DNA of 63,977 nt, filler included, from Octopus bimaculoides (taxonomy: Eukaryota): NCBI RefSeq assembly GCF_001194135.2. It is 8 parts of 7 records of this genome, joined end to end, with 100 filler letters (N's around TTAATTAATTAA, not from the genome) between each part and the next. Parts side by side here need not be neighbours in the genome. Positions count along the whole stretch, not along the records: positions 1 to 10,824 come from NC_068987.1; 7 more parts are not named here. One strand, given 5' to 3'. Below the pieces are notes generated by a model. That model had not been told where the DNA came from, ran no database searches, and saw only the letters and a list, made by a program, of their open reading frames with translations. The translations under genes and the position numbers were made by a program. Of this stretch, positions 32 through 10,924 are shown one piece after another; position 1 is the first letter of the stretch, and the number at the start of each line of letters is the position of its first letter.

Positions 32-1108
32 ATTAGAATGGCCCTTTGTTTTTCAACTTTCTAAAAGTTTAGTTCCCGCCCTCTATCTTGTTCCTATTAA
101 CAAAAAATCAATCTCTGCAAAATTTTAGCTCAATCGAACAACTGCAATGCGACCCTTATCGACCATGAAACTTTGGAGTGTTTTTTATCTCTTTTATAAT
201 ATTCTCTTAAGTTAAGAACTTGTTCAGGTTTATTCTTAGAAAAGTGACAATAAATATAATAAACACCTATTTTTCGCCGTCATCCAGTCGGCGGTCAGCC
301 GTGAAGGAGTGAGATTGTGAGTTACGTTCGTCCATTGAAAGAATTGTACTGCACCGAATGGCAGTGTAGAGAAATAGAATATTAAGAAATATACGTTAGT
401 GATAAACAGTAAACTAATATGACTTCTCTGCGTTTGACAATGTAAGTTGATTTATTTGTAATTACTTGTAAGCACTCTTCATTTTGTTGTGGAGCATTAT
501 GATATAAATCTTCCCCTTTTGTGCTGGTAGCCCTAACAAAGTTGTAATACCATGTTTATAACTTCTCCGTTTTTATAATGTTATGTGCTTTGTATACTTA
601 TTTTCAACGCCTTAGAACAAAATTTAGAGAAGCGAGACACACAGAAATACAGCACAAATTTAACCTAAACGACTGTCAAGAATTAGAGTTGCACTGGGGT
701 GGAAAGCTCCTCCCAGCAGTCACAGGCGTTGAAAAGGTTGACAGATTGACAATAATAGTAACTTTTCAAGGCAAGGAACAATTGTTGGGAGTCCCTGAAA
801 TTCCAACATCTTCAGGAGAACAGCAAGCCATGGCTGTTTACCAAGCAGTGGAGAAGTGGGATATAACCGACAAAATTCAGGCACTTTGCTGTGATACGAT
901 AGCAAGTAACACAGGTCGAGTAAATGGTGCCTGTGCAAATCTAGAAAAATTGTCCAATCGCGACCTGTTGTACTTCCTTTGCCGTCATCATATATTTGAG
1001 TTAGTTTTTAGGAACTGTTTTGACTCACTCATGGATGCAGTTTCTGATCCAGACATAGCGTTTTTCAAAAGATTTAAAGAAACCTGAACGAAACTCAACA
1101 AGGTTTAN
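32..1108 (+). mobile_element. hAT-superfamily (hATm-like) DNA transposon fragment with transposase ORF at 578-1087, truncated by a gap
   Basis: The ORF contains DRLTIIV...EQLLGVP...ALCCDTIASNTGRVNGAC...CRHHIFEL, matching the second catalytic Asp and CxxH-type motif of this transposase family. A stop at 1085-87 indicates decay. Confidence 0.8.
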
Positions 1109-1720
1109 NNNNNNNNNNNNNNNNNNNNNNNNNNNNNNNNNNNNNNNNNNNNNNNNNNNNNNNNNNNNNNNNNNNNNNNNNNNNNNNNNNNNNNNNNNNN
1201 NNNNNNNNNNNNNNNNNNNNNNNNNNNNNNNNNNNNNNNNNNNNNNNNNNNNNNNNNNNNNNNNNNNNNNNNNNNNNNNNNNNNNNNNNNNNNNNNNNNN
1301 NNNNNNNNNNNNNNNNNNNNNNNNNNNNNNNNNNNNNNNNNNNNNNNNNNNNNNNNNNNNNNNNNNNNNNNNNNNNNNNNNNNNNNNNNNNNNNNNNNNN
1401 NNNNNNNNNNNNNNNNNNNNNNNNNNNNNNNNNNNNNNNNNNNNNNNNNNNNNNNNNNNNNNNNNNNNNNNNNNNNNNNNNNNNNNNNNNNNNNNNNNNN
1501 NNNNNNTGAGTTTTAAAGGGATTACATTATGATGGCAGTTACAATGTTTCCTCTTAATTCGATTTCAGATGCCGGCTAACCACAACGACCCTATTGTCAT
1601 TACCGAGCCAACAATATGTTGCTAGGCTCTGGTAACTTTTCTCGCTGGATAAATCTGAAAGTCCTATTCAGAACTACATGATTTCTGTAGAGTAAGTAAT
1701 ATTATTATTAATAACGATAC

Positions 1721-2012: not shown

Positions 2013-2100
2013 TTACCATCCGTTTAAAATCGTTTATTTCCTGCTTAAAGATTTGCTAAAGCCTCAAAAACGGCCAAATACTAAAAAGAAAGAAGTACGA

Positions 2101-2530
2101 TAGGCACAGGAGTGACTGTGTGGTAAGATGCTTACTTCCCAGCCACATAGTTACAGGTTCAATCCCACTGTGTGACACTTTGGGCAAGTATCTTCTACTA
2201 TAGCCTCGGGCCGACCAAAGCCTTGTGACTGAAATTGGTAGACGGAAACTGAAAGAAGCTCGTCGTGTATATATGTATATATATGTATGTATGTATGTAT
2301 TTGTTATTTGTCCCTGTTTGCCCCCCTCCCCACCATCGCTTGACAACCGATGTTGGTATGTTTACGTCCGCGTCACCTAGCGGCTCGACAAAAGGAGACC
2401 GATAGAATAAGTACTAAGCTTACAAAGAATAAGTCCTGGGGTCGATTTGTTCTACTAAAGGCGATGCTCCATCAAGGTAGTGCTCCATCATGACCGCAAT
2501 CAAATAACTGAAACAAGTAAAAGAATAAAA
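2101..2530 (+). mobile_element. tRNA-derived SINE family A (head, internal microsatellite, 3' module). Other copies or parts at about 8455-8612(+), 17945-18118(+), 26045-26225(-), 27620-27830(+), 41780-42010(+), 44530-44720(-), 47775-47990(+), 53230-53410(-), 57610-58455(-, two), 61440-61545(-), 62740-62960(+)
   Basis: A-box-like GGAGTGGCTGTGTGG and B-box GGTTCA(A/G)TCC, shared body CTTGGGCAAGTGTCTTCTACTATAGCCTCGGGCCGACCAAAGCCTTGTGAGTGGATTTGGTAGACGGAAACTGAAAGAAGCCCGTCG, and tail AAATGACTGAAACAAGTAAAAGAG, repeated throughout the window. Confidence 0.85.
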
Positions 2531-2714
2531 TAAAAAAAGGAAAATTAATAAATATGTAAAACTGAAAAAAAACAGTGCCCCCCACTCCTATATTACTAAT
2601 AACAATATGTCCTACTCAACGAAATAAACATCGGAGATGCTTTTCCCCGGGCAGAAACTGCAGGAGCTACCGAGAGGTATTGCAAGCTCTTCTAGTGACT
2701 GCATTGCAATATTC

Positions 2715-4549: not shown

Positions 4550-5830
4550 AAACCCAAAATGATATTCAGTGACAAACCTGGTCTTTTGAATAATGGACAC
4601 TTTTCGTTTTTTTTTTTTTTGTTTTTGTTTTTTTTTGCTATGGTCTATACGAATAGACTGTGCTCGTAGCCATCGTAGATCGATGGGTAGGTTGCGGGAG
4701 TAGGTCGCAGTAGTTGACGACTGCAGGAAAAATATGGACATGGAGGTAATTCCGGAGGGGTGATTTTCGAGGGAGGAAGGAAAGGGCACGATGATTAGTA
4801 AAAGATCTGGTGAGGGTGACACAATACGGAGGGTGTAAAAAAAAATAAAGGAGGTGATTGGATCGGGAGTGTCCGAGTGAATGTGAAATGAGACCAGCCA
4901 ACTTTGAATAGCAGAAGCAATTGCCGTAGCAGCAGAGAGAGAGAGGAGACAGAACGTCTGGCCTACAGACATTCTCTCTTCTCTCTGGCGGAGCCACCCA
5001 ACTTTTGGTGGGTGGGGATGCAGTTAGAATGCATGTTTGTGTAACAGCAGCACCTTCCTAGCTATCAGCAGAATATCTCATTATGATTCTTGCCTGAGCT
5101 TTGTAGACAATAATTATTGAGGACTGAACAATTTTCTGTCTTTGAGGGAGAAAACGAGTCTTTGTGATGTAGTTCTGTTACGTTGAAAATGTGCATTTGC
5201 TAGGAAAGTTTCTCAATGATTGTTAGATGAAGAATTTGTAGAGATCTTGAATGTTCTTGTTGCTTGCTGTTAATATTTGGTGAGGCCTGATATTTTCTTG
5301 ATATATATAATGATTGTGGCTTTGTGTTGATCTGACACAACTGGAGGATATTTTCGAGATCTCCTGTTCATAGAATCAGTGCATTTTTTATGAGGCATCT
5401 CAGTTGCGTTCGTTAGGTATTTCTGTCTTTGCGGCAGAAAGCCAGTCTTTGTGTTGTAGTTTTGTTAGGTTGAAGATGTGCATTTGACAGGGAAGTTTCT
5501 CAATGATTGTTAGATGAAGAATTTGTAACGACTTTGAAATTTCTTGTTGCTTGCTGTTAATATTTGGTGGGATATGATATTATTTTCTTGGTATGTATAA
5601 CGATTGTGTCTTTGTGTTGGTCTAACCCAATTAGAGGATATTTTCGAGGTCTCTTGTTCATAGAATCAGTACATTTTTTATATGAGGTATCTTAGTTGCG
5701 TGTGTAAGGTATTTGGGTGCGAAAGATTAGGGAAAAATGAATGGTGGTGTCATCTACATAAGTGTGGGTATTTGGGGGTGGTGTGATGGCAAGTAGGTCG
5801 TTGATGTATAGGATGAAGAATTTGCATGAC
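4550..5830 (-). mobile_element. Degenerate non-LTR retrotransposon (CR1/Jockey-like RT) relic with a tandem duplication of about 290 bp
   Basis: The minus strand at about 5750-5815 reads ILYINDLLAITPPPNTHTYVDDTT (RT motif LYINDL...YxDD). Segments 5130-5410 and 5420-5700 are diverged direct copies. Confidence 0.5.
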
Positions 5831-6704
5831 AAAATATGAAATAAATAGCATCTTTCTGTAGCAACATTATTACGACTTCCTTCAACAAGGATATTTCACT
5901 TACATCGTTTAGCCAGTGTTGTCGCTGTTGTCTGTTTTAGTCTCTGATCGGCTTTGATCAAGCAACCTTTTGGTCAAATATATTCCAACTTTAACAATCC
6001 TCATTTTTTTTTTTATACCTAGAACAACATAATCCTAATATTTCTTCCACGTTTTTACCGCCGAGTTCAACTTTGCCTTTCATCCTTTCAGAGTCGATAA
6101 AATAAGTACCAGTCGATGTAATCCACTTACCATATCTCCCGAAATCGCTGGCCTTGTGCCAAATTTGAAAGCCAATATTCATTCCACGTTTAAGATATAA
6201 TTAAGCATGATTGGGGCCTAGATTTGGCCACTATTTCTAGCCGGTCGAGTGACCACAAAAAGTTTCCTATGTCCTTATCAAAAGCACATAAGTCACAATA
6301 TCTTAATGCTTATCCCTTTAAAATATAAATCAACCTCATTAGCTAATTTTCTACATCCTTGTGCACTACAGTACATCTACAAAATTGTCATATCAATACT
6401 TCGGCATGTATTAGAAGACTTATTAGACCTTCTTCGCTAACGAGGTCTAATAAGACTTAAACATGTTCAGAGTTAGCTTTCTTCTTTTCCTTCCTTCACT
6501 TATTCGTCTGCGGCCAAGCTGGGGCACTGCCTTGAAGGGTGTAGTCGAGCAGATAAATCCATTTTTTATTTTGTTTTGTGTTTTGGAGGAGGTTTTACTG
6601 TTGCTTTTGTTTTCTTTTGTTTTTGTAAATCTCTTACTTATTCTGTCGGTCTCTTTGCCGAGCCGCTGAGTTACGGGAACCGATTTTTTTGCCAAATGAA
6701 CACA

Positions 6705-6746
<42 letters not shown>

Positions 6747-7228
6747 ATGCTGTCTTAAAATGATATAAGACGACAATGTATAACGTGTTATTACATACAT
6801 AATGACAGTCGAGCATGGCTAAATACTTGCGATTGTAGGTCTGTTTAATCAACGCCGACCTTGGGCTATATAACAAAACTATTTATGACCCATTGCCGAC
6901 ATACCCGTTTCTGCTTCCTTTTGCCATCCATACTTTCTCCCACTACACCACCTCATTATCCCGACAATTCAGCGTACGATGCCGAACCAACGACAGAGCG
7001 TCTACATCAGGCTACTGACCACCTTTGTTGAGAGGTGGGCCACATGAGACATGACCCCTTTTCAGATGGACCGTAAAACTAAAAGAAAATTCAAGGTAAT
7101 TTTTCGTTAGAAAAATCCCGTGCGACACAGTTTGTCCATTACTGGTCTACATGATCGCTTGAAACTGGCACTCCGTCGGCTACGACGACAAGGGTTCCAG
7201 TTGATCTGATCAACGGAACAACTTGCTC

Positions 7229-8455
7229 ACGCTGACGGAGTCATTATGTTGTGGACCACTACCCATACCGCGCGGAGGAGCTAGTCCATTGTCCTCCATG
7301 AGGGAAGGTCGCAGGGCGGCCGTGCGTGGGGAGTTCACACGCCTAGCCTGACCTGCGGGCCCCGTCCCTGATCCGCTGGCCACCAGTTTTACGGCGCCTG
7401 GCTGCCGTATGTTTTGGAACTTTTGTTTTTCCATTTTAATTTATTTAGCGGCAATTTCCATGAGCATATGGCTGAAACGATTAAGTTGAACTTAAAGAAG
7501 GTGCGAAACCCACCCCCCAAGATAAGCAAACATACCACCAACCAACCATCTAGAGTACCCACCGACCAACTGACTAACACCAGAGTGTGTACTACGGAGG
7601 GCTCTGCCTGGTAGTGCATCCACCGGCCGTCAGTTGTTTGTTCTGACAGAGCAAAGCCTGGCAGTGCATCCACCTACCGGAAACAGCGAGTCATAACACA
7701 CTAGACGCCAAAAACGCATCATGGCGGCGCATCCACCCACAGGTAGGTCATAACATATCAGACAAACCCGGTGGCGCATCCACCCGCTGAAAACACAGCA
7801 GGTCATAACTCACCGGGCTCCACTCACCACCAACACCGGGTCATAACGTACCAGGCATTGCCAACCGGGCCTAATCGCATCTACCGGTCCCTAAACAGGA
7901 ACCGCCCGACATGCCAAAGAACCTCCCAAACAAGACTAAACAAGAAAAACCTGAGAACGATCCACCCAAACAACCAAGGAACCCCTATGTTGTATGATAC
8001 TGGTGAATCGCACCAGTAAACAACTACAGTCCCGTTGGGAACCAACGCGACACTACACTGGCATCTAACTAGCCGGCTCGGGACATCTAGAAGGCAAACC
8101 AGCGGAAGTATACCTACCCTAGCAGGGAGGCCTACACTTCCCAATCAGGATCACCCATACACTGCATGGTCCCCACCAAATAAATTGGCACCGCTATGGG
8201 GGAAAAGAAGAACACGTTTAGTTTGTCCAAAGTGAGGGGACCAATCCGGCATGGTTGAACCTACCGGCACAGCTCCCCACACGGACGTAAGCTCTTTCAC
8301 CGCGACAAGATAGTGTTCATAAGGATAAAGCCTGGCAGTACATCCAGCTACCCGAAACAGCGAGTCATAACACACTAGACGCCAAGAACAAGCGTCATGG
8401 TGGCGCATCCACCCACTGAGTCAAGCAGGTCATAGCGCACCAGGCCTCACGAAAG
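7229..8455. mobile_element. Unclassified GC-rich interspersed element with iterated GCATCC...CATAAC units and a direct repeat of about 90 bp
   Basis: GC content jumps abruptly between a SINE C fragment and a SINE A fragment. Segment 7652-7740 is repeated at 8325-8414. No recognisable protein. Confidence 0.45.
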
Positions 8456-8614
8456 AGTCTTCTACTTTTGCCTCGGGCCTTGTGAATGGATTTGGTAGAC
8501 AGAAACTGAAAGAAGCCCGTCGTATATATGTATATAAGTCCTGGGGTCAATTTGTTTGACTAAAGGCAGTGCTCCAGCATGGCCGCAGTCAAATGACTGA
8601 AAGAAATAAAAGAA

Positions 8615-9193
8615 TAAATCTCTCTCAAATCGCACCCCTACTGTCTTAAAAAAAGATACATTAAATAACATGGGCCGATGAACCTTACACATAGAGAAGG
8701 AGACGAGATGAACTTTGACCGTATGTCTGTTCGATAGAGACTGACCTTAGTCTTCTCAACAACAAAAAGAATAAACATGCTAANNNNNNNNNNNNNNNNN
8801 NNNNNNNNNNNNNNNNNNNNNNNNNNNNNNNNNNNNNNNNNNNNNNNNNNNNNNNNNNNNNNNNNNNNNNNNNNNNNNNNNNNNNNNNNNNNNNNNNNNN
8901 NNNNNNNNNNNNNNNNNNNNNNNNNNNNNNNNNNNNNNNNNNNNNNNNNNNNNNNNNNNNNNNNNNNNNNNNNNNNNNNNNNNNNNNNNNNNNNNNNNNN
9001 NNNNNNNNNNNNNNNNNNNNNNNNNNNNNNNNNNNNNNNNNNNNNNNNNNNNNNNNNNNNNNNNNNNNNNNNNNNNNNNNNNNNNNNNNNNNNNNNNNNN
9101 NNNNNNNNNNNNNNNNNNNNNNNNNNNNNNNNNNNNNNNNNNNNNNNNNNNNNNNNNNNNNNNNNNNNNNNNNNNNNNNNNNNNNNNNNNNNN

Positions 9194-9363: not shown

Positions 9364-9770
9364 CATAATAATAATAATAATGGTTTCAAATTTTGGCACA
9401 AGCCCAGCAATTTTGGGTAGGGTAAGTCGATTACATCGACTCCAGTGCTTAACTGCTATCTATTTTATCGGCTCCAAAAGGATGACAGGCAAAGTCGATT
9501 TCGGTGGACCATAGTACTAAAAGAAAATTCAAAGTAATTTTTCGTTGGAAAAATACCGTAGGCCGCAGTTTGCTTGACCTGCTATAAGTAACTACCAAAT
9601 CTCCCTCAAATCACACCCCTACCGTCTTAGAAAAAGTTACATTAAATAAAAGTAACATGAACTTGTGTTCCTTACACATAGAAGAAAAGACGTGATGAAC
9701 TTTGATCGTGTGTCTGTTCGATAGAGACTGACCAGAGTCTTCTCAACAACAAAATGAATAACCGCATTAA
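8615..9770 (+). repeat. Clustered copies of repeat family D (8615-8785, 9505-9770; part also at 7070-7160)
   Basis: Shared AAATCTC(C/T)CTCAAATC(A/G)CACCCCTAC...GATGAACTTTGA(T/C)CGT(G/A)TGTCTGTTCGATAGAGACTGACC...GTCTTCTCAACAACAAAA, and shared GGACC(G/A)TA...ACTAAAAGAAAATTCAA(G/A)GTAATTTTTCGTT(A/G)GAAAAAT. Confidence 0.6.
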
Positions 9771-10924
9771 TAATTTTTTTCCATTCAATCCACCTGATCA
9801 TTACTATATGACTCCCCTCCCACTCCTCATCTTCATTCCTGCAGTCACTGACCAATAGATTCTTGAAAACGACATCAACCATGCTAATGTCATTTCGACA
9901 ATAGTATATGAACGACCTTTGCCTGCTGAACTCAGAACTCAACACATGTAAGTTCAGACACTGTAACCACTTCCTCAATCTCCAGTTTGTACCGTATCCA
10001 CCCCCATCCACCCCACCTGATTTCAAACTAAACAATTTGTCAACCTTTCTTTCTCAGCACTGTACGTTTTGAAAAATGATTTCCTTACCTTTTATCTTTT
10101 ACCTGTTTCAGTCATTGGACTGCGGCCAGAATTTCTTAATTGAATGAATCGCCCCCAGTTGATTGGCTGCTCTTTCTAGCAGATCGACTGTTCGTCTACA
10201 GGCTTTTTTGTTGGCTCGTAAATTTTTCCTTCATTTATCCAAGACTATTCCTGCTGATGCAGTAGATAACACATTACATCAGCTTTTTAAGTTTCACGTT
10301 GATAATGTAACTACTACTGCTACAACTATTGCTGCTGCAGGTGGTGATGCTAATTTTCAATGCAAAGCAATTAGCCAAATGATAATTCTTTCTAATTTTG
10401 GCACAAGGCCAGCAATTTTAGAGGGAAAGGAGTCGAATACATCGATCCTAGTACTTGAATGGTGTATATTATTATCGACCCCAAAAGAATGAAAGGCAGA
10501 CTTGACCTCGGCAGAATTTGAACTCAAAATATAAAACAGACGAAATGTTGCAAAGGAATTTTGAGGGAAGGGGCAAGTCGATTACATTGACCCCAGTGCT
10601 CAACTGGTACTTATTTTATCGATCCCGAAAAGCAAAGTCTACATCAGCGGAATTTGAACTCGGAACATAAAGACGGATGAAATGCCACTAAGCATTTTGT
10701 CCGCCATGCTAACAATTTTTCCAGATCACCTCCTTAATAATAATGGTTTCAAAATTTGGTACAAGGCCAGCAATTTCGAGGGATGGGGTAAGTCGATTAC
10801 GTTGCCCCATTGTTCTGACCCCTGNNNNNNNNNNNNNNNNNNNNNNNNNNNNNNNNNNNNNNNNNNNNTTAATTAATTAANNNNNNNNNNNNNNNNNNNN
10901 NNNNNNNNNNNNNNNNNNNNNNNN

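What the first reader, a model, noticed from the sequence alone, without database searches (positions are those of the whole stretch)
7650..8440. Array of conserved-flank, variable-stem hairpins in an unclassified GC-rich element: candidate new RNA motif
Seen: at least five units of GCATCC-A[variable]GT-CATAAC at 7666-7697, 7729-7754, 7776-7809, 8339-8371 and 8405-8436, with partial units at about 7615 and 7842. The variable part is always self-complementary but differs in sequence and length (acccac-ag-gtaggt; acccgctg-aaaaca-cagcaggt; acccact-gagtca-agcaggt). Its mismatches are mostly C.A on the plus strand, which become G.U pairs on the minus strand. The minus-strand RNA therefore reads GUUAUG-[stem-loop]-GGAUGC, in some units closed by an outer helix (AGUG/CACU, GGUG/CACC). 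A block of about 90 bp is duplicated 673 bp apart. Inference: an invariant internal loop with exchangeable stems is the signature of a protein-binding RNA element or small ribozyme, repeated in the UTR or terminal repeat of an unknown retroelement. I do not recognise it as a hammerhead, twister or HDV fold.
Basis: partly seen in the sequence, partly recalled or inferred. Interest (0 to 1): 0.72.

Follow-up and report, generated by a model that had tools for sequence, protein, structure and literature searches.

The report
Decaying hairpin-shaped repeats in mobile-element DNA
A short run of seven related 50-65-base repeats, each a rough palindrome framed by two conserved 8-letter words, sits in a non-coding GC-rich insert of a repeat-rich, probably octopus, genome; the pattern that looked like a new RNA motif is mostly what shared ancestry, CpG decay and skewed base composition produce, so it is probably ordinary.

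Summary
The repeat is real. GCATCCAC...GTCATAAC occurs only at 7600-8440, always on the + strand: five full units and two half units, with a 117-bp block (7653-7761) duplicated at 8327-8443.

The claim that the stems are exchangeable is not supported.
- The stems are the same stem with point changes.
- In a five-unit alignment 82.7% of the proposed pairs form, against 82.3% when partners are shuffled, so there is no covariation.
- Only one unit (7763-7822) folds far better than shuffles.
- The youngest copy, U5, has stem-breaking changes.
- G.U on the minus strand versus C.A on the plus strand runs 11:4 by column, which is what the block's base skew (2.7:1) predicts.
- Variable columns are mostly CpG positions (16/19 versus 12/32), and the two invariant words contain no CpG.

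There is no Rfam match, no coding signal and no homologue in any collection I could reach; none of them holds this genome.

Context: the block 7143-8466 is missing from a paralogous copy of its flanks at 9485-9761. It is fused on the + strand to the body and tail of a SINE, starting where that SINE's tRNA-like head would end.

Best reading: a decaying minisatellite-like array in the non-coding part of a retroposed element. A protein-binding hairpin array is not excluded, because the two word cores are more conserved than chance (p about 0.004).

The parts
7143..8466 (+). GC-rich (53%), A+C-rich, non-coding block that carries the repeats; absent from the paralogous copy of its flanks
   Evidence: Composition. 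No Pfam hit in six frames. No protein relatives. The best empty-site join is 7142|8597 against 9485-9720.
7598..7652 (+). U0, half unit: the 5' word GCATCCAC at 7616-7623, followed by an unrelated hairpin GTCAG...CTGAC; no 3' word
   Evidence: nhmmer E=1.6e-3 on the 5' half of the profile only.
7653..7712 (+). U1, full unit, A type (GCCTGGCAGT-GCATCCAC ... GTCATAAC)
   Evidence: The inner stem has 8 positions with 3 G.U and 1 C.A on the minus strand and is not better than shuffles.
7713..7766 (+). U2, full unit, B type, with a shortened inner hairpin (5 bp, 4-nt loop)
7758..7826 (+). U3, the best preserved unit: outer stem CCCGGTG/CACCGGG, inner stem of 8 bp, loop of 6 nt
   Evidence: -33.4 kcal/mol, z=-5.4 on the minus strand; -22.7 kcal/mol, z=-3.9 on the plus strand.
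7812..7866 (+). U4, half unit: the 3' word GTCATAAC at 7840-7847 and a degenerate 5' word GCTCCAC at 7817-7823
   Evidence: E=3e-4 on the 3' half of the profile only. No significant fold.
7877..7915 (+). Possible very degenerate unit: GCATCTAC followed by the hairpin CCGGTCCC-TAAA-CAGGAACCG; not found by the profile
8327..8386 (+). U5, a 94% copy of U1 with ACATCCAG in place of GCATCCAC and two stem-breaking substitutions
8387..8450 (+). U6, B type, a relative of U2; the 3' word reads GTCATAGC; inner stem of 7 bp
7998..8018 (.). Perfect 8-bp hairpin TACTGGTG-AATCG-CACCAGTA that uses the same CTGGTG/CACCAG arms as the outer stems of the units
8458..8618 (+). Body and A-rich tail of a tRNA-derived SINE (internally deleted), lacking the tRNA-like head and joined directly to the block
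   Evidence: Alignment to the full SINE copy at 2097-2535. Tail pieces recur at 6496-6533 and 10108-10128.
7046..7142 (+). Left flank X, which recurs at 9485-9575 (84%)
8597..8774 (+). Right flank Y (its start overlaps the SINE tail), which recurs at 9576-9761

Best explanation
The units are a short, decaying minisatellite-like array. An ancestral GC-rich quasi-palindromic unit of about 55-60 bp (outer stem, GCATCCAC, inner hairpin, GTCATAAC, outer stem) was amplified head to tail six times at 7598-7915. Two of the units were later copied to 8327-8450. The array lies in the non-coding part of a 1.3-kb sequence that was inserted here, most likely by retroposition on the + strand as one piece with the SINE body and tail at its 3' side (inferred).

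The look of an invariant loop with variable stems arises without selection on structure:
- the stems are CpG-rich and decay fast by transitions;
- those transitions leave wobble pairs on the G+T-rich strand;
- the two 8-letter words contain no CpG and change slowly.

Shown: the repeat itself, the homology of the stems, the lack of covariation, the CpG effect, the composition effect and the absence of coding or any known RNA family. Inferred: amplification by slippage or unequal exchange, the retroposed origin, and the lack of function.
For: - Units are direct, contiguous and homologous.
- No covariation: 82.7% of cells paired against 82.3 +/- 1.8 in shuffles, 247/500 shuffles at least as high; score 0.300 against 0.308.
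- The register is right (33-55% paired when slid), so the consensus is a palindrome, but this is inherited.
- Only U3 folds well.
- U5, the youngest copy, carries pair-breaking changes and a change in the word.
- Across both duplicated blocks, 3 of 32 word columns differ against 16 of 85 other columns, which is not significant (my count).
- 18 of 28 variable columns are pure transitions and 15 are CpG-type.
- CpG-involved columns are variable in 16/19 cases against 12/32 elsewhere, p=0.0015.
- G.U to C.A by column is 11:4 against 2.7:1 expected from composition.
- No Rfam family, no tRNA, no Pfam domain.
- The block is an indel relative to 9485-9761 and continues into the SINE body exactly after the position of the tRNA-like head.
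Against: - The two word cores (GTCATA and CATCCA) are more conserved than random placement of invariant columns allows: two runs of 6, p=0.004. They also survive in the two half units, where the rest is unalignable. CpG-freeness explains part of this, not clearly all.
- The spacing between the words varies by 12-22 nt, yet a hairpin brings them together. That fits recognition of a folded single strand better than a duplex site.
- The minus strand of the array and of the stretch between the two clusters folds better than shuffles: z=-3.5, -3.4 and -2.9. The plus strand also does so: z=-2.1 and -2.8.
- Five sequences give the covariation test little power.
- The CpG classification is partly circular. 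With CpGs defined on U3 alone the contrast is 7/8 against 21/43 (my count; I did not run a test, and it looks marginal).
Confidence: 0.6

Rival explanations
1. Each unit is a cis-acting RNA hairpin read on the minus strand. The conserved asymmetric internal loop GUUAUGA / UGGAUGC is held between two helices and binds a protein. Several copies raise avidity, for example for export, packaging or localisation of an element's RNA. The loop can be drawn with a box C/D-like core: G.A, A.G and U.U from UGA opposite GAU.
For: - The word cores are more conserved than chance and are kept in the half units.
- The spacing varies but the words are juxtaposed by the stem.
- The structure is in register (slid controls).
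- Minus-strand folds are better than shuffles.
- One pair follows the path G-C, G-U, A-U (columns 28-41) and one changes C-G to U-A (columns 12-58).
Against: - There is no covariation above shuffles.
- The G.U excess equals the composition expectation.
- U1 and U5 do not fold better than shuffles, and U5 has broken pairs.
- A competing small hairpin GGUGG-AUGCR-CYRCC puts GGAUGC in a loop instead (U2 and U0).
- The K-turn drawing needs a 2-nt bulge instead of 3.
- No Rfam family matches.
- The fusion to a + strand SINE tail suggests that + is the sense strand.
Confidence: 0.15
2. The words are duplex-DNA binding sites that were multiplied as an enhancer- or promoter-like repeat of a mobile element, as in LTR U3 repeats or LINE 5' monomers. 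The 3' word contains a nuclear-receptor-type half site RGGTCA in U2, U3, U4 and U6.
For: - Direct orientation, a 47-65 bp period and word conservation.
- AGGTCA or GGGTCA sits inside the 3' word.
- Such tandem repeats are common in element control regions (my own knowledge, not tested).
Against: - The distance between the two words varies by up to 10 bp, which does not suit a fixed two-site protein.
- U1 and U5 read GAGTCA.
- No promoter, LTR ends or primer-binding site could be shown; the candidate TGGTGGCCAGCGG at about 7385 does not look like the complement of a tRNA 3' end.
- No data on chromatin or expression are available.
Confidence: 0.15
3. The units are single-stranded-DNA hairpins recognised by a rolling-circle or HUH-type enzyme or a recombinase, in the manner of Helitron ends, bacterial REP elements or integron attC sites.
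For: Conserved flanks with a variable palindrome are the architecture of attC and REP sites. CTAG follows U1 and U5.
Against: - The two words are not inverse complements of each other.
- The array region 7590-7920 has no perfect Watson-Crick stem of 6 bp or more with a loop of 12 nt or less.
- The strict 22-base unit pattern has no match in 185,579 prokaryotic genomes, in IMG/VR or in JGI metagenomes. The two-unit pattern gives only chance-level hits, none homologous.
- No transposase or Rep gene is nearby.
Confidence: 0.03

Closest known systems
Internal tandem repeats (VNTR or minisatellite regions) of non-autonomous retroposons and LINE untranslated regions, for example the VNTR of SVA-type composite elements
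   Same: GC-rich, non-coding, head-to-tail units of tens of bases with indels between units. They are embedded between other modules and followed by a SINE-derived 3' part with an A-rich tail.
   Different: Only about 7 units are present. The units are quasi-palindromic with two sharply conserved words. The parent element was not identified, so the composite structure rests on one copy.
Kink-turn motifs of box C/D RNAs and SECIS elements (bound by L7Ae-family proteins)
   Same: On the minus strand AUGA lies directly 5' of a helix and GAU lies on the opposite strand, so G.A, A.G and U.U can be drawn as in a C/D core.
   Different: The bulge would be 2 nt, not 3. In SECIS terms the GA is offset by 2 nt from the helix, and there is no AAR apical loop or 12-14 bp helix II. 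Neither family matches in Rfam.
Integron attC sites and bacterial REP/BIME elements
   Same: Conserved short flanks around a palindrome of variable sequence and length, found in arrays.
   Different: The window is eukaryotic. The flanks are not inverse complements. All units are in direct orientation. No homologue exists in prokaryotic collections.

Membership tests
New structured RNA family (Rfam-type motif) | A consensus secondary structure shared in register by the copies | tested here: met
   82.7% of cells pair, against 33-55% when partners are slid by 1-3 columns.
New structured RNA family (Rfam-type motif) | Compensatory changes beyond what column composition gives | tested here: not met
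   Shuffles give 82.3% paired, and 247/500 reach the observed value. Covariation score is 0.300 against 0.308. The test has only 5 sequences, so its power is low.
New structured RNA family (Rfam-type motif) | Homologous copies in other loci or genomes | not testable with these tools
   No copy in genome, viral or metagenome contigs. The protein collections hold no ORFs from this genome's SINEs or from the block.
Known ribozymes and other Rfam families | A covariance-model match | tested here: not met
   Nothing in 7130-8470 on either strand at E below 1; the best hits are unrelated miRNA and sRNA models at E of 1.3 or more.
Kink-turn (box C/D, SECIS) | Tandem sheared G.A pairs next to a helix with a 3-nt bulge on one strand | tested here: not met
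   By inspection of A3. G47.A24, A48.G23 and U49.U22 can be drawn only with a 2-nt bulge (U45, G46). The alternative register clashes with the inner helix.
Animal microRNA precursor cluster | A stem of about 33-35 bp (lower plus upper stem) with a conserved mature arm | tested here: not met
   The best unit has about 20 bp interrupted by a 4x4 loop. Conservation sits in the middle of the arms, not at a seed. There is no Rfam miRNA hit on the units.
DNA-transposon subterminal repeats | Motif copies in inverted orientation at the two ends, terminal inverted repeats, and a transposase | tested here: not met
   All copies are on the + strand. There are no terminal inverted repeats. There is no transposase in 6750-8560; the hAT-like ORF lies 6 kb away.
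tRNA-derived SINE head (units as multiplied SINE heads) | Significant similarity to the head of the SINE copy in the window, or a tRNA fold | tested here: not met
   Best p=0.06 for U6, about 0.5-0.9 for the others, and a control region scores p=0.02. ARAGORN finds nothing.
Minisatellite-like repeat inside a retroposed element | Head-to-tail direct units related by descent, non-coding | tested here: met
Minisatellite-like repeat inside a retroposed element | The host sequence is a mobile insertion with a recognisable 3' tail and target duplication | tested here: inconclusive
   There is an indel against the paralogous site and a fusion to the SINE body and tail. No clean target duplication was found, because the junction lies inside sequence shared by both flanks. 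No other copy is available.

The most novel reading that the evidence does not exclude
The units are a previously undescribed protein-binding hairpin, read as RNA from the minus strand. Its conserved asymmetric internal loop (GUUAUGA opposite UGGAUGC, with a C/D-like G.A / A.G / U.U core) is presented several times by a cephalopod retroelement, for example to recruit an L7Ae-family or other RNA-binding protein.
Probability: 0.1. Interest if true: 0.55.

Novelty: new member of a known kind. Interest (0 to 1): 0.2.

Why it matters
If the neutral reading holds, this is one more internal repeat of a mobile element. It is useful mainly as a caution: an 'invariant loop with variable stems' can arise from CpG decay of a palindromic repeat on a strand with skewed composition. 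If the rival reading held, it would be a new RNA-protein recognition module from cephalopods, animals known for unusual RNA biology. That can only be decided with genome-wide copies and expression data.

Tried and rejected
- **Rfam.** Searched at permissive thresholds on the whole piece and on 7130-8470: nothing.
- **tRNA scan**: nothing.
- **Coding potential.** Pfam on six frames of 6750-8560; a word-indexed search of the minus-frame pseudo-ORFs; an exhaustive HMMER search of the + ORF 7747-8016. The only hit, P0020, is a translated prokaryotic repeat.
- **Finding the source contig or other copies.** Exact look-ups of two window ORFs failed. The hAT-like ORF led only to contigs sharing that transposon at 86% nt identity and none of the window's SINEs. 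A SINE/junction query found no candidates, so this genome is not in the collections.
- **DNA pattern scans.** The 22-base unit pattern gave 0 hits in genomes, viruses and metagenomes. The 24-base two-unit pattern gave 18 hits, all chance matches or local tandem duplications and none homologous by blastn. One of them (L015) resembles U1 closely, but there the sequence is an exon end duplicated around a telomere-like insert.
- **Literature.** A search for the 9-mers returned only primers. The Octopus vulgaris supplement of PMC9115989 has only scattered single occurrences of the 8-mers and none of the four sequence words tried from the SINE adjoining the block, on either strand; one transcript carries a motif of the window's second SINE family.
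- **Origin from the SINE's tRNA-like head.** Not significant.
- **5S rRNA origin.** A resemblance I recalled from memory; there is no Rfam 5S hit, so I dropped it.
- **Solo LTR with a primer-binding site.** No TG...CA ends with a target duplication, and no convincing primer-binding site.
- **Perfect DNA hairpins.** Only mildly enriched in the block (8 against 3.1, p=0.045) and absent from the array.

Full report
**Observation.** The region was read on both strands.
- GCATCCAC occurs exactly five times (7616, 7666, 7729, 7776, 8405), with a one-mismatch copy at 7877.
- GTCATAAC occurs exactly five times (7690, 7747, 7802, 7840, 8364), with GTCATAGC at 8429.
- All copies are on the + strand and none lies elsewhere in the 10.8-kb piece.
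- The combined pattern has 4 matches against 0.02 expected.
- A profile built from the five full units finds them again, plus two half units: 7606-7628 (5' half only) and 7823-7857 (3' half only). It finds nothing else.
- The units are contiguous from 7598 to about 7915. A second cluster, 8327-8450, is a copy of the U1+U2 pair: 7653-7761 versus 8327-8443, 84% over 117 columns, with the first 63 nt at 94%.
- TRF reports nothing because the units are too diverged.

So the repeat and the duplication are real.

**Hairpins.** Folded one by one with flanks, only U3 (7763-7822) stands out: -33.4 kcal/mol and z=-5.4 on the minus strand, z=-3.9 on the plus strand. U0 reaches z=-3.1 with a different structure. 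The others are within one standard deviation or so of shuffles (z from +0.9 to -1.1).

The segments between the words, tested alone on the minus strand, give these results:

| Unit | p against shuffles |
|---|---|
| U3 | <0.0005 |
| U6 | 0.036 |
| U2 | 0.057 |
| U1 | 0.22 |
| U5 | 0.19 |

On the plus strand only U3 is significant. A competing small hairpin, GGUGG-AUGCR-CYRCC, places the 5' word in a loop and is what RNAfold predicts for U2 and U0.

**Are the stems exchangeable?** No. In the alignment the arms are the same sequence with point changes. I wrote the long-hairpin structure on that alignment and counted pairs.
- 82.7% of cells pair, far above the slid controls (33-55%), so the consensus is a genuine quasi-palindrome.
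- Dealing the 3' partners out among the units gives 82.3 +/- 1.8%, and 247 of 500 shuffles do as well.
- The covariation score is 0.300 against 0.308.
- There are single suggestive cases (columns 28-41: G-C, G-U, A-U; columns 12-58: C-G against U-A), but they are no more than chance.
- U5, the 94% copy of U1, has three of its four differences in the word and stem, and two of them break pairs.
- Across both duplicated blocks the words differ at 3 of 32 columns against 16 of 85 elsewhere, which is not significant (my count).

**Strand argument.** Non-Watson-Crick cells are 28 G.U on the minus strand against 6 C.A. By column the split is 11 against 4. The whole block is A+C-rich on the + strand (A 0.29, C 0.30, G 0.23, T 0.18). 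For the array this predicts a G.T to C.A ratio of 2.7 to 1, which is 10.9 against 4.1. The asymmetry is therefore what composition gives and says nothing about which strand is read.

**Why the words look invariant.**
- The two invariant runs (GTCATA and CATCCA cores) are more clustered than random placement allows, p=0.004.
- Of the 28 variable ungapped columns, 18 are pure transitions and 15 are CpG-type.
- Columns that are part of a CpG in any unit are variable in 16 of 19 cases, the others in 12 of 32 (p=0.0015).
- Both words are CpG-free, whereas the stems and the stretch before the 5' word (GGCGGCGC) are full of CpG.

CpG decay thus produces fast-changing stems that change by transitions, hence wobble pairs, next to slow-changing words. 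The classification is partly circular. With CpGs defined on U3 alone the contrast is 7/8 against 21/43 (my count; I did not run a test, and it looks marginal). I take this as a large part of the explanation, not all of it.

**What the block is.**
- It has no Rfam match, no tRNA and no Pfam domain in six frames.
- It has no protein relatives.
- Its flanks recur 2.4 kb downstream, joined together: 7046-7142 with 9485-9575, and 8597-8774 with 9576-9761. The best join is 7142|8597. So about 1.45 kb is an insertion relative to that copy.
- The 3' 160 bases of the insert are the body and A-rich tail of a tRNA-derived SINE, of which a full copy lies at 2097-2535.
- The similarity starts at about 8458, where the SINE's tRNA-like head would end.
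- The units themselves are not derived from that head.

My inference is that the block and the SINE-like 3' part were retroposed together on the + strand. Either this is a 5'-truncated copy of the element that donated the SINE's body (its partner LINE's untranslated region), or it is a composite retroposon. This rests on one copy and on a junction that lies inside shared sequence, so I found no clean target duplication.

**Organism.** The SINEs are ones I recall from Octopus genomes; that is memory, not a test. One Octopus vulgaris transcript in the supplement of PMC9115989 carries the motif of the window's second SINE family, which is consistent.

**Search for relatives.**
- The collections I could reach do not contain this genome: a SINE-derived query found no candidate at all, and the exact look-ups failed.
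- The hAT-like ORF at 578-1087 has 47-84% relatives on ENA, Logan and NCBI contigs. Those contigs share only that transposon.
- DNA pattern scans of prokaryotic genomes, viral contigs and metagenomes gave either nothing or chance-level hits.

**Comparison with known kinds.**
- The closest match in kind is the internal GC-rich tandem-repeat region of composite retroposons and LINE untranslated regions.
- As a structure, the loop can be drawn with a box C/D-like G.A / A.G / U.U core. That drawing needs a 2-nt bulge and fails the SECIS and K-turn definitions.
- The attC, REP, Helitron, subterminal-repeat and microRNA readings each fail a defining feature (see the membership table).

**Verdict.** The feature is real, and its anatomy was described mostly correctly. 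The evidence offered for a selected RNA fold (variable stems, G.U bias, invariant loop) is accounted for by common descent, CpG decay and base skew.
- Neutral repeat reading: 0.6.
- Functional minus-strand RNA hairpin array: 0.15.
- Duplex-DNA binding sites: 0.15.
- Interest: low (0.2). The novel case has probability 0.1 and would deserve interest 0.55 if true.

Noticed in passing
window 578-1087 (+): An intact 169-aa ORF of a hAT/DUF659-type transposase fragment, cut by the N gap at 1108. Relatives at 47-84% aa identity lie on ENA, Logan and NCBI contigs. Two long ENA contigs (L001, L002) carry 86% nt copies, and in L001 a Dimer_Tnp_hAT gene lies about 9 kb away.
   Followed up: partly
window 2097-2535 (+); fragments at 6440-6750 (-), 8458-8618 (+), 10108-10128 (-): A full-length tRNA-derived SINE (degenerate head, (TA)n/(GT)n core, A-rich tail) and several fragments of it. 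ARAGORN does not call the head as a tRNA.
   Followed up: partly
window 6060-6150 (-), 9380-9498 (+), 10390-10720 (+): A second SINE family (tggtttcaaattttggcacaagg ... ggcaaagtcgacc ...). The same motif occurs in an Octopus vulgaris transcript in the supplement of PMC9115989.
   Followed up: partly
window 5133-5391 and 5420-5681: A tandem duplication of about 288 bp at 86-88% identity inside a G+T-rich stretch (GC skew +0.3). It is a different element from the one studied.
   Followed up: no
window 7046-7142 with 8597-8774, versus 9485-9761: The flanks of the block recur joined together 2.4 kb downstream. The end of the left flank (GGCCGCAGTTTG...TGAC) itself resembles the SINE tail (GGCCGCAGTCAAATGAC), so the junction may reflect recombination between tail-like sequences rather than a simple insertion.
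   Followed up: partly
window 7189-7225: A long near-perfect hairpin CAAGGGTTCCAGTTGATC-T-GATCAACGGAACAACTTG at the left end of the block. It is unrelated in sequence to the units. Its weak Rfam hit to mir-2796 (E=1.7) is not credible.
   Followed up: no
window 7921-8319: The unique stretch between the two repeat clusters folds better than shuffles on both strands (z=-2.9 and -2.8). It holds a perfect 8-bp hairpin at 7998-8018 built from the same CTGGTG/CACCAG arms as the units' outer stems.
   Followed up: partly
L015 1895-1990 (JGI Ga0115001_10056588): A protist-like metagenome contig with PGPG-repeat exons and introns full of CCCTAA repeats. It carries GCATCCACCTACCAGGAAACGAGGTCAT twice, flanking a (CCCTAA)n insert and running on into AAC in the first copy only. 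This first copy is very close to U1 (GCATCCACCTACCGGAAACAGCGAGTCATAAC). It looks like a target duplication of an intron-like insertion. I judge the resemblance to U1 a coincidence, though an unlikely one (rough p about 1e-3).
   Followed up: partly
window 1108-1506 and 8784-9193: Assembly gaps (runs of N). The second is flanked on its right by (ATA)n/(TAA)n microsatellites and gives rise to spurious long ORFs.
   Followed up: no
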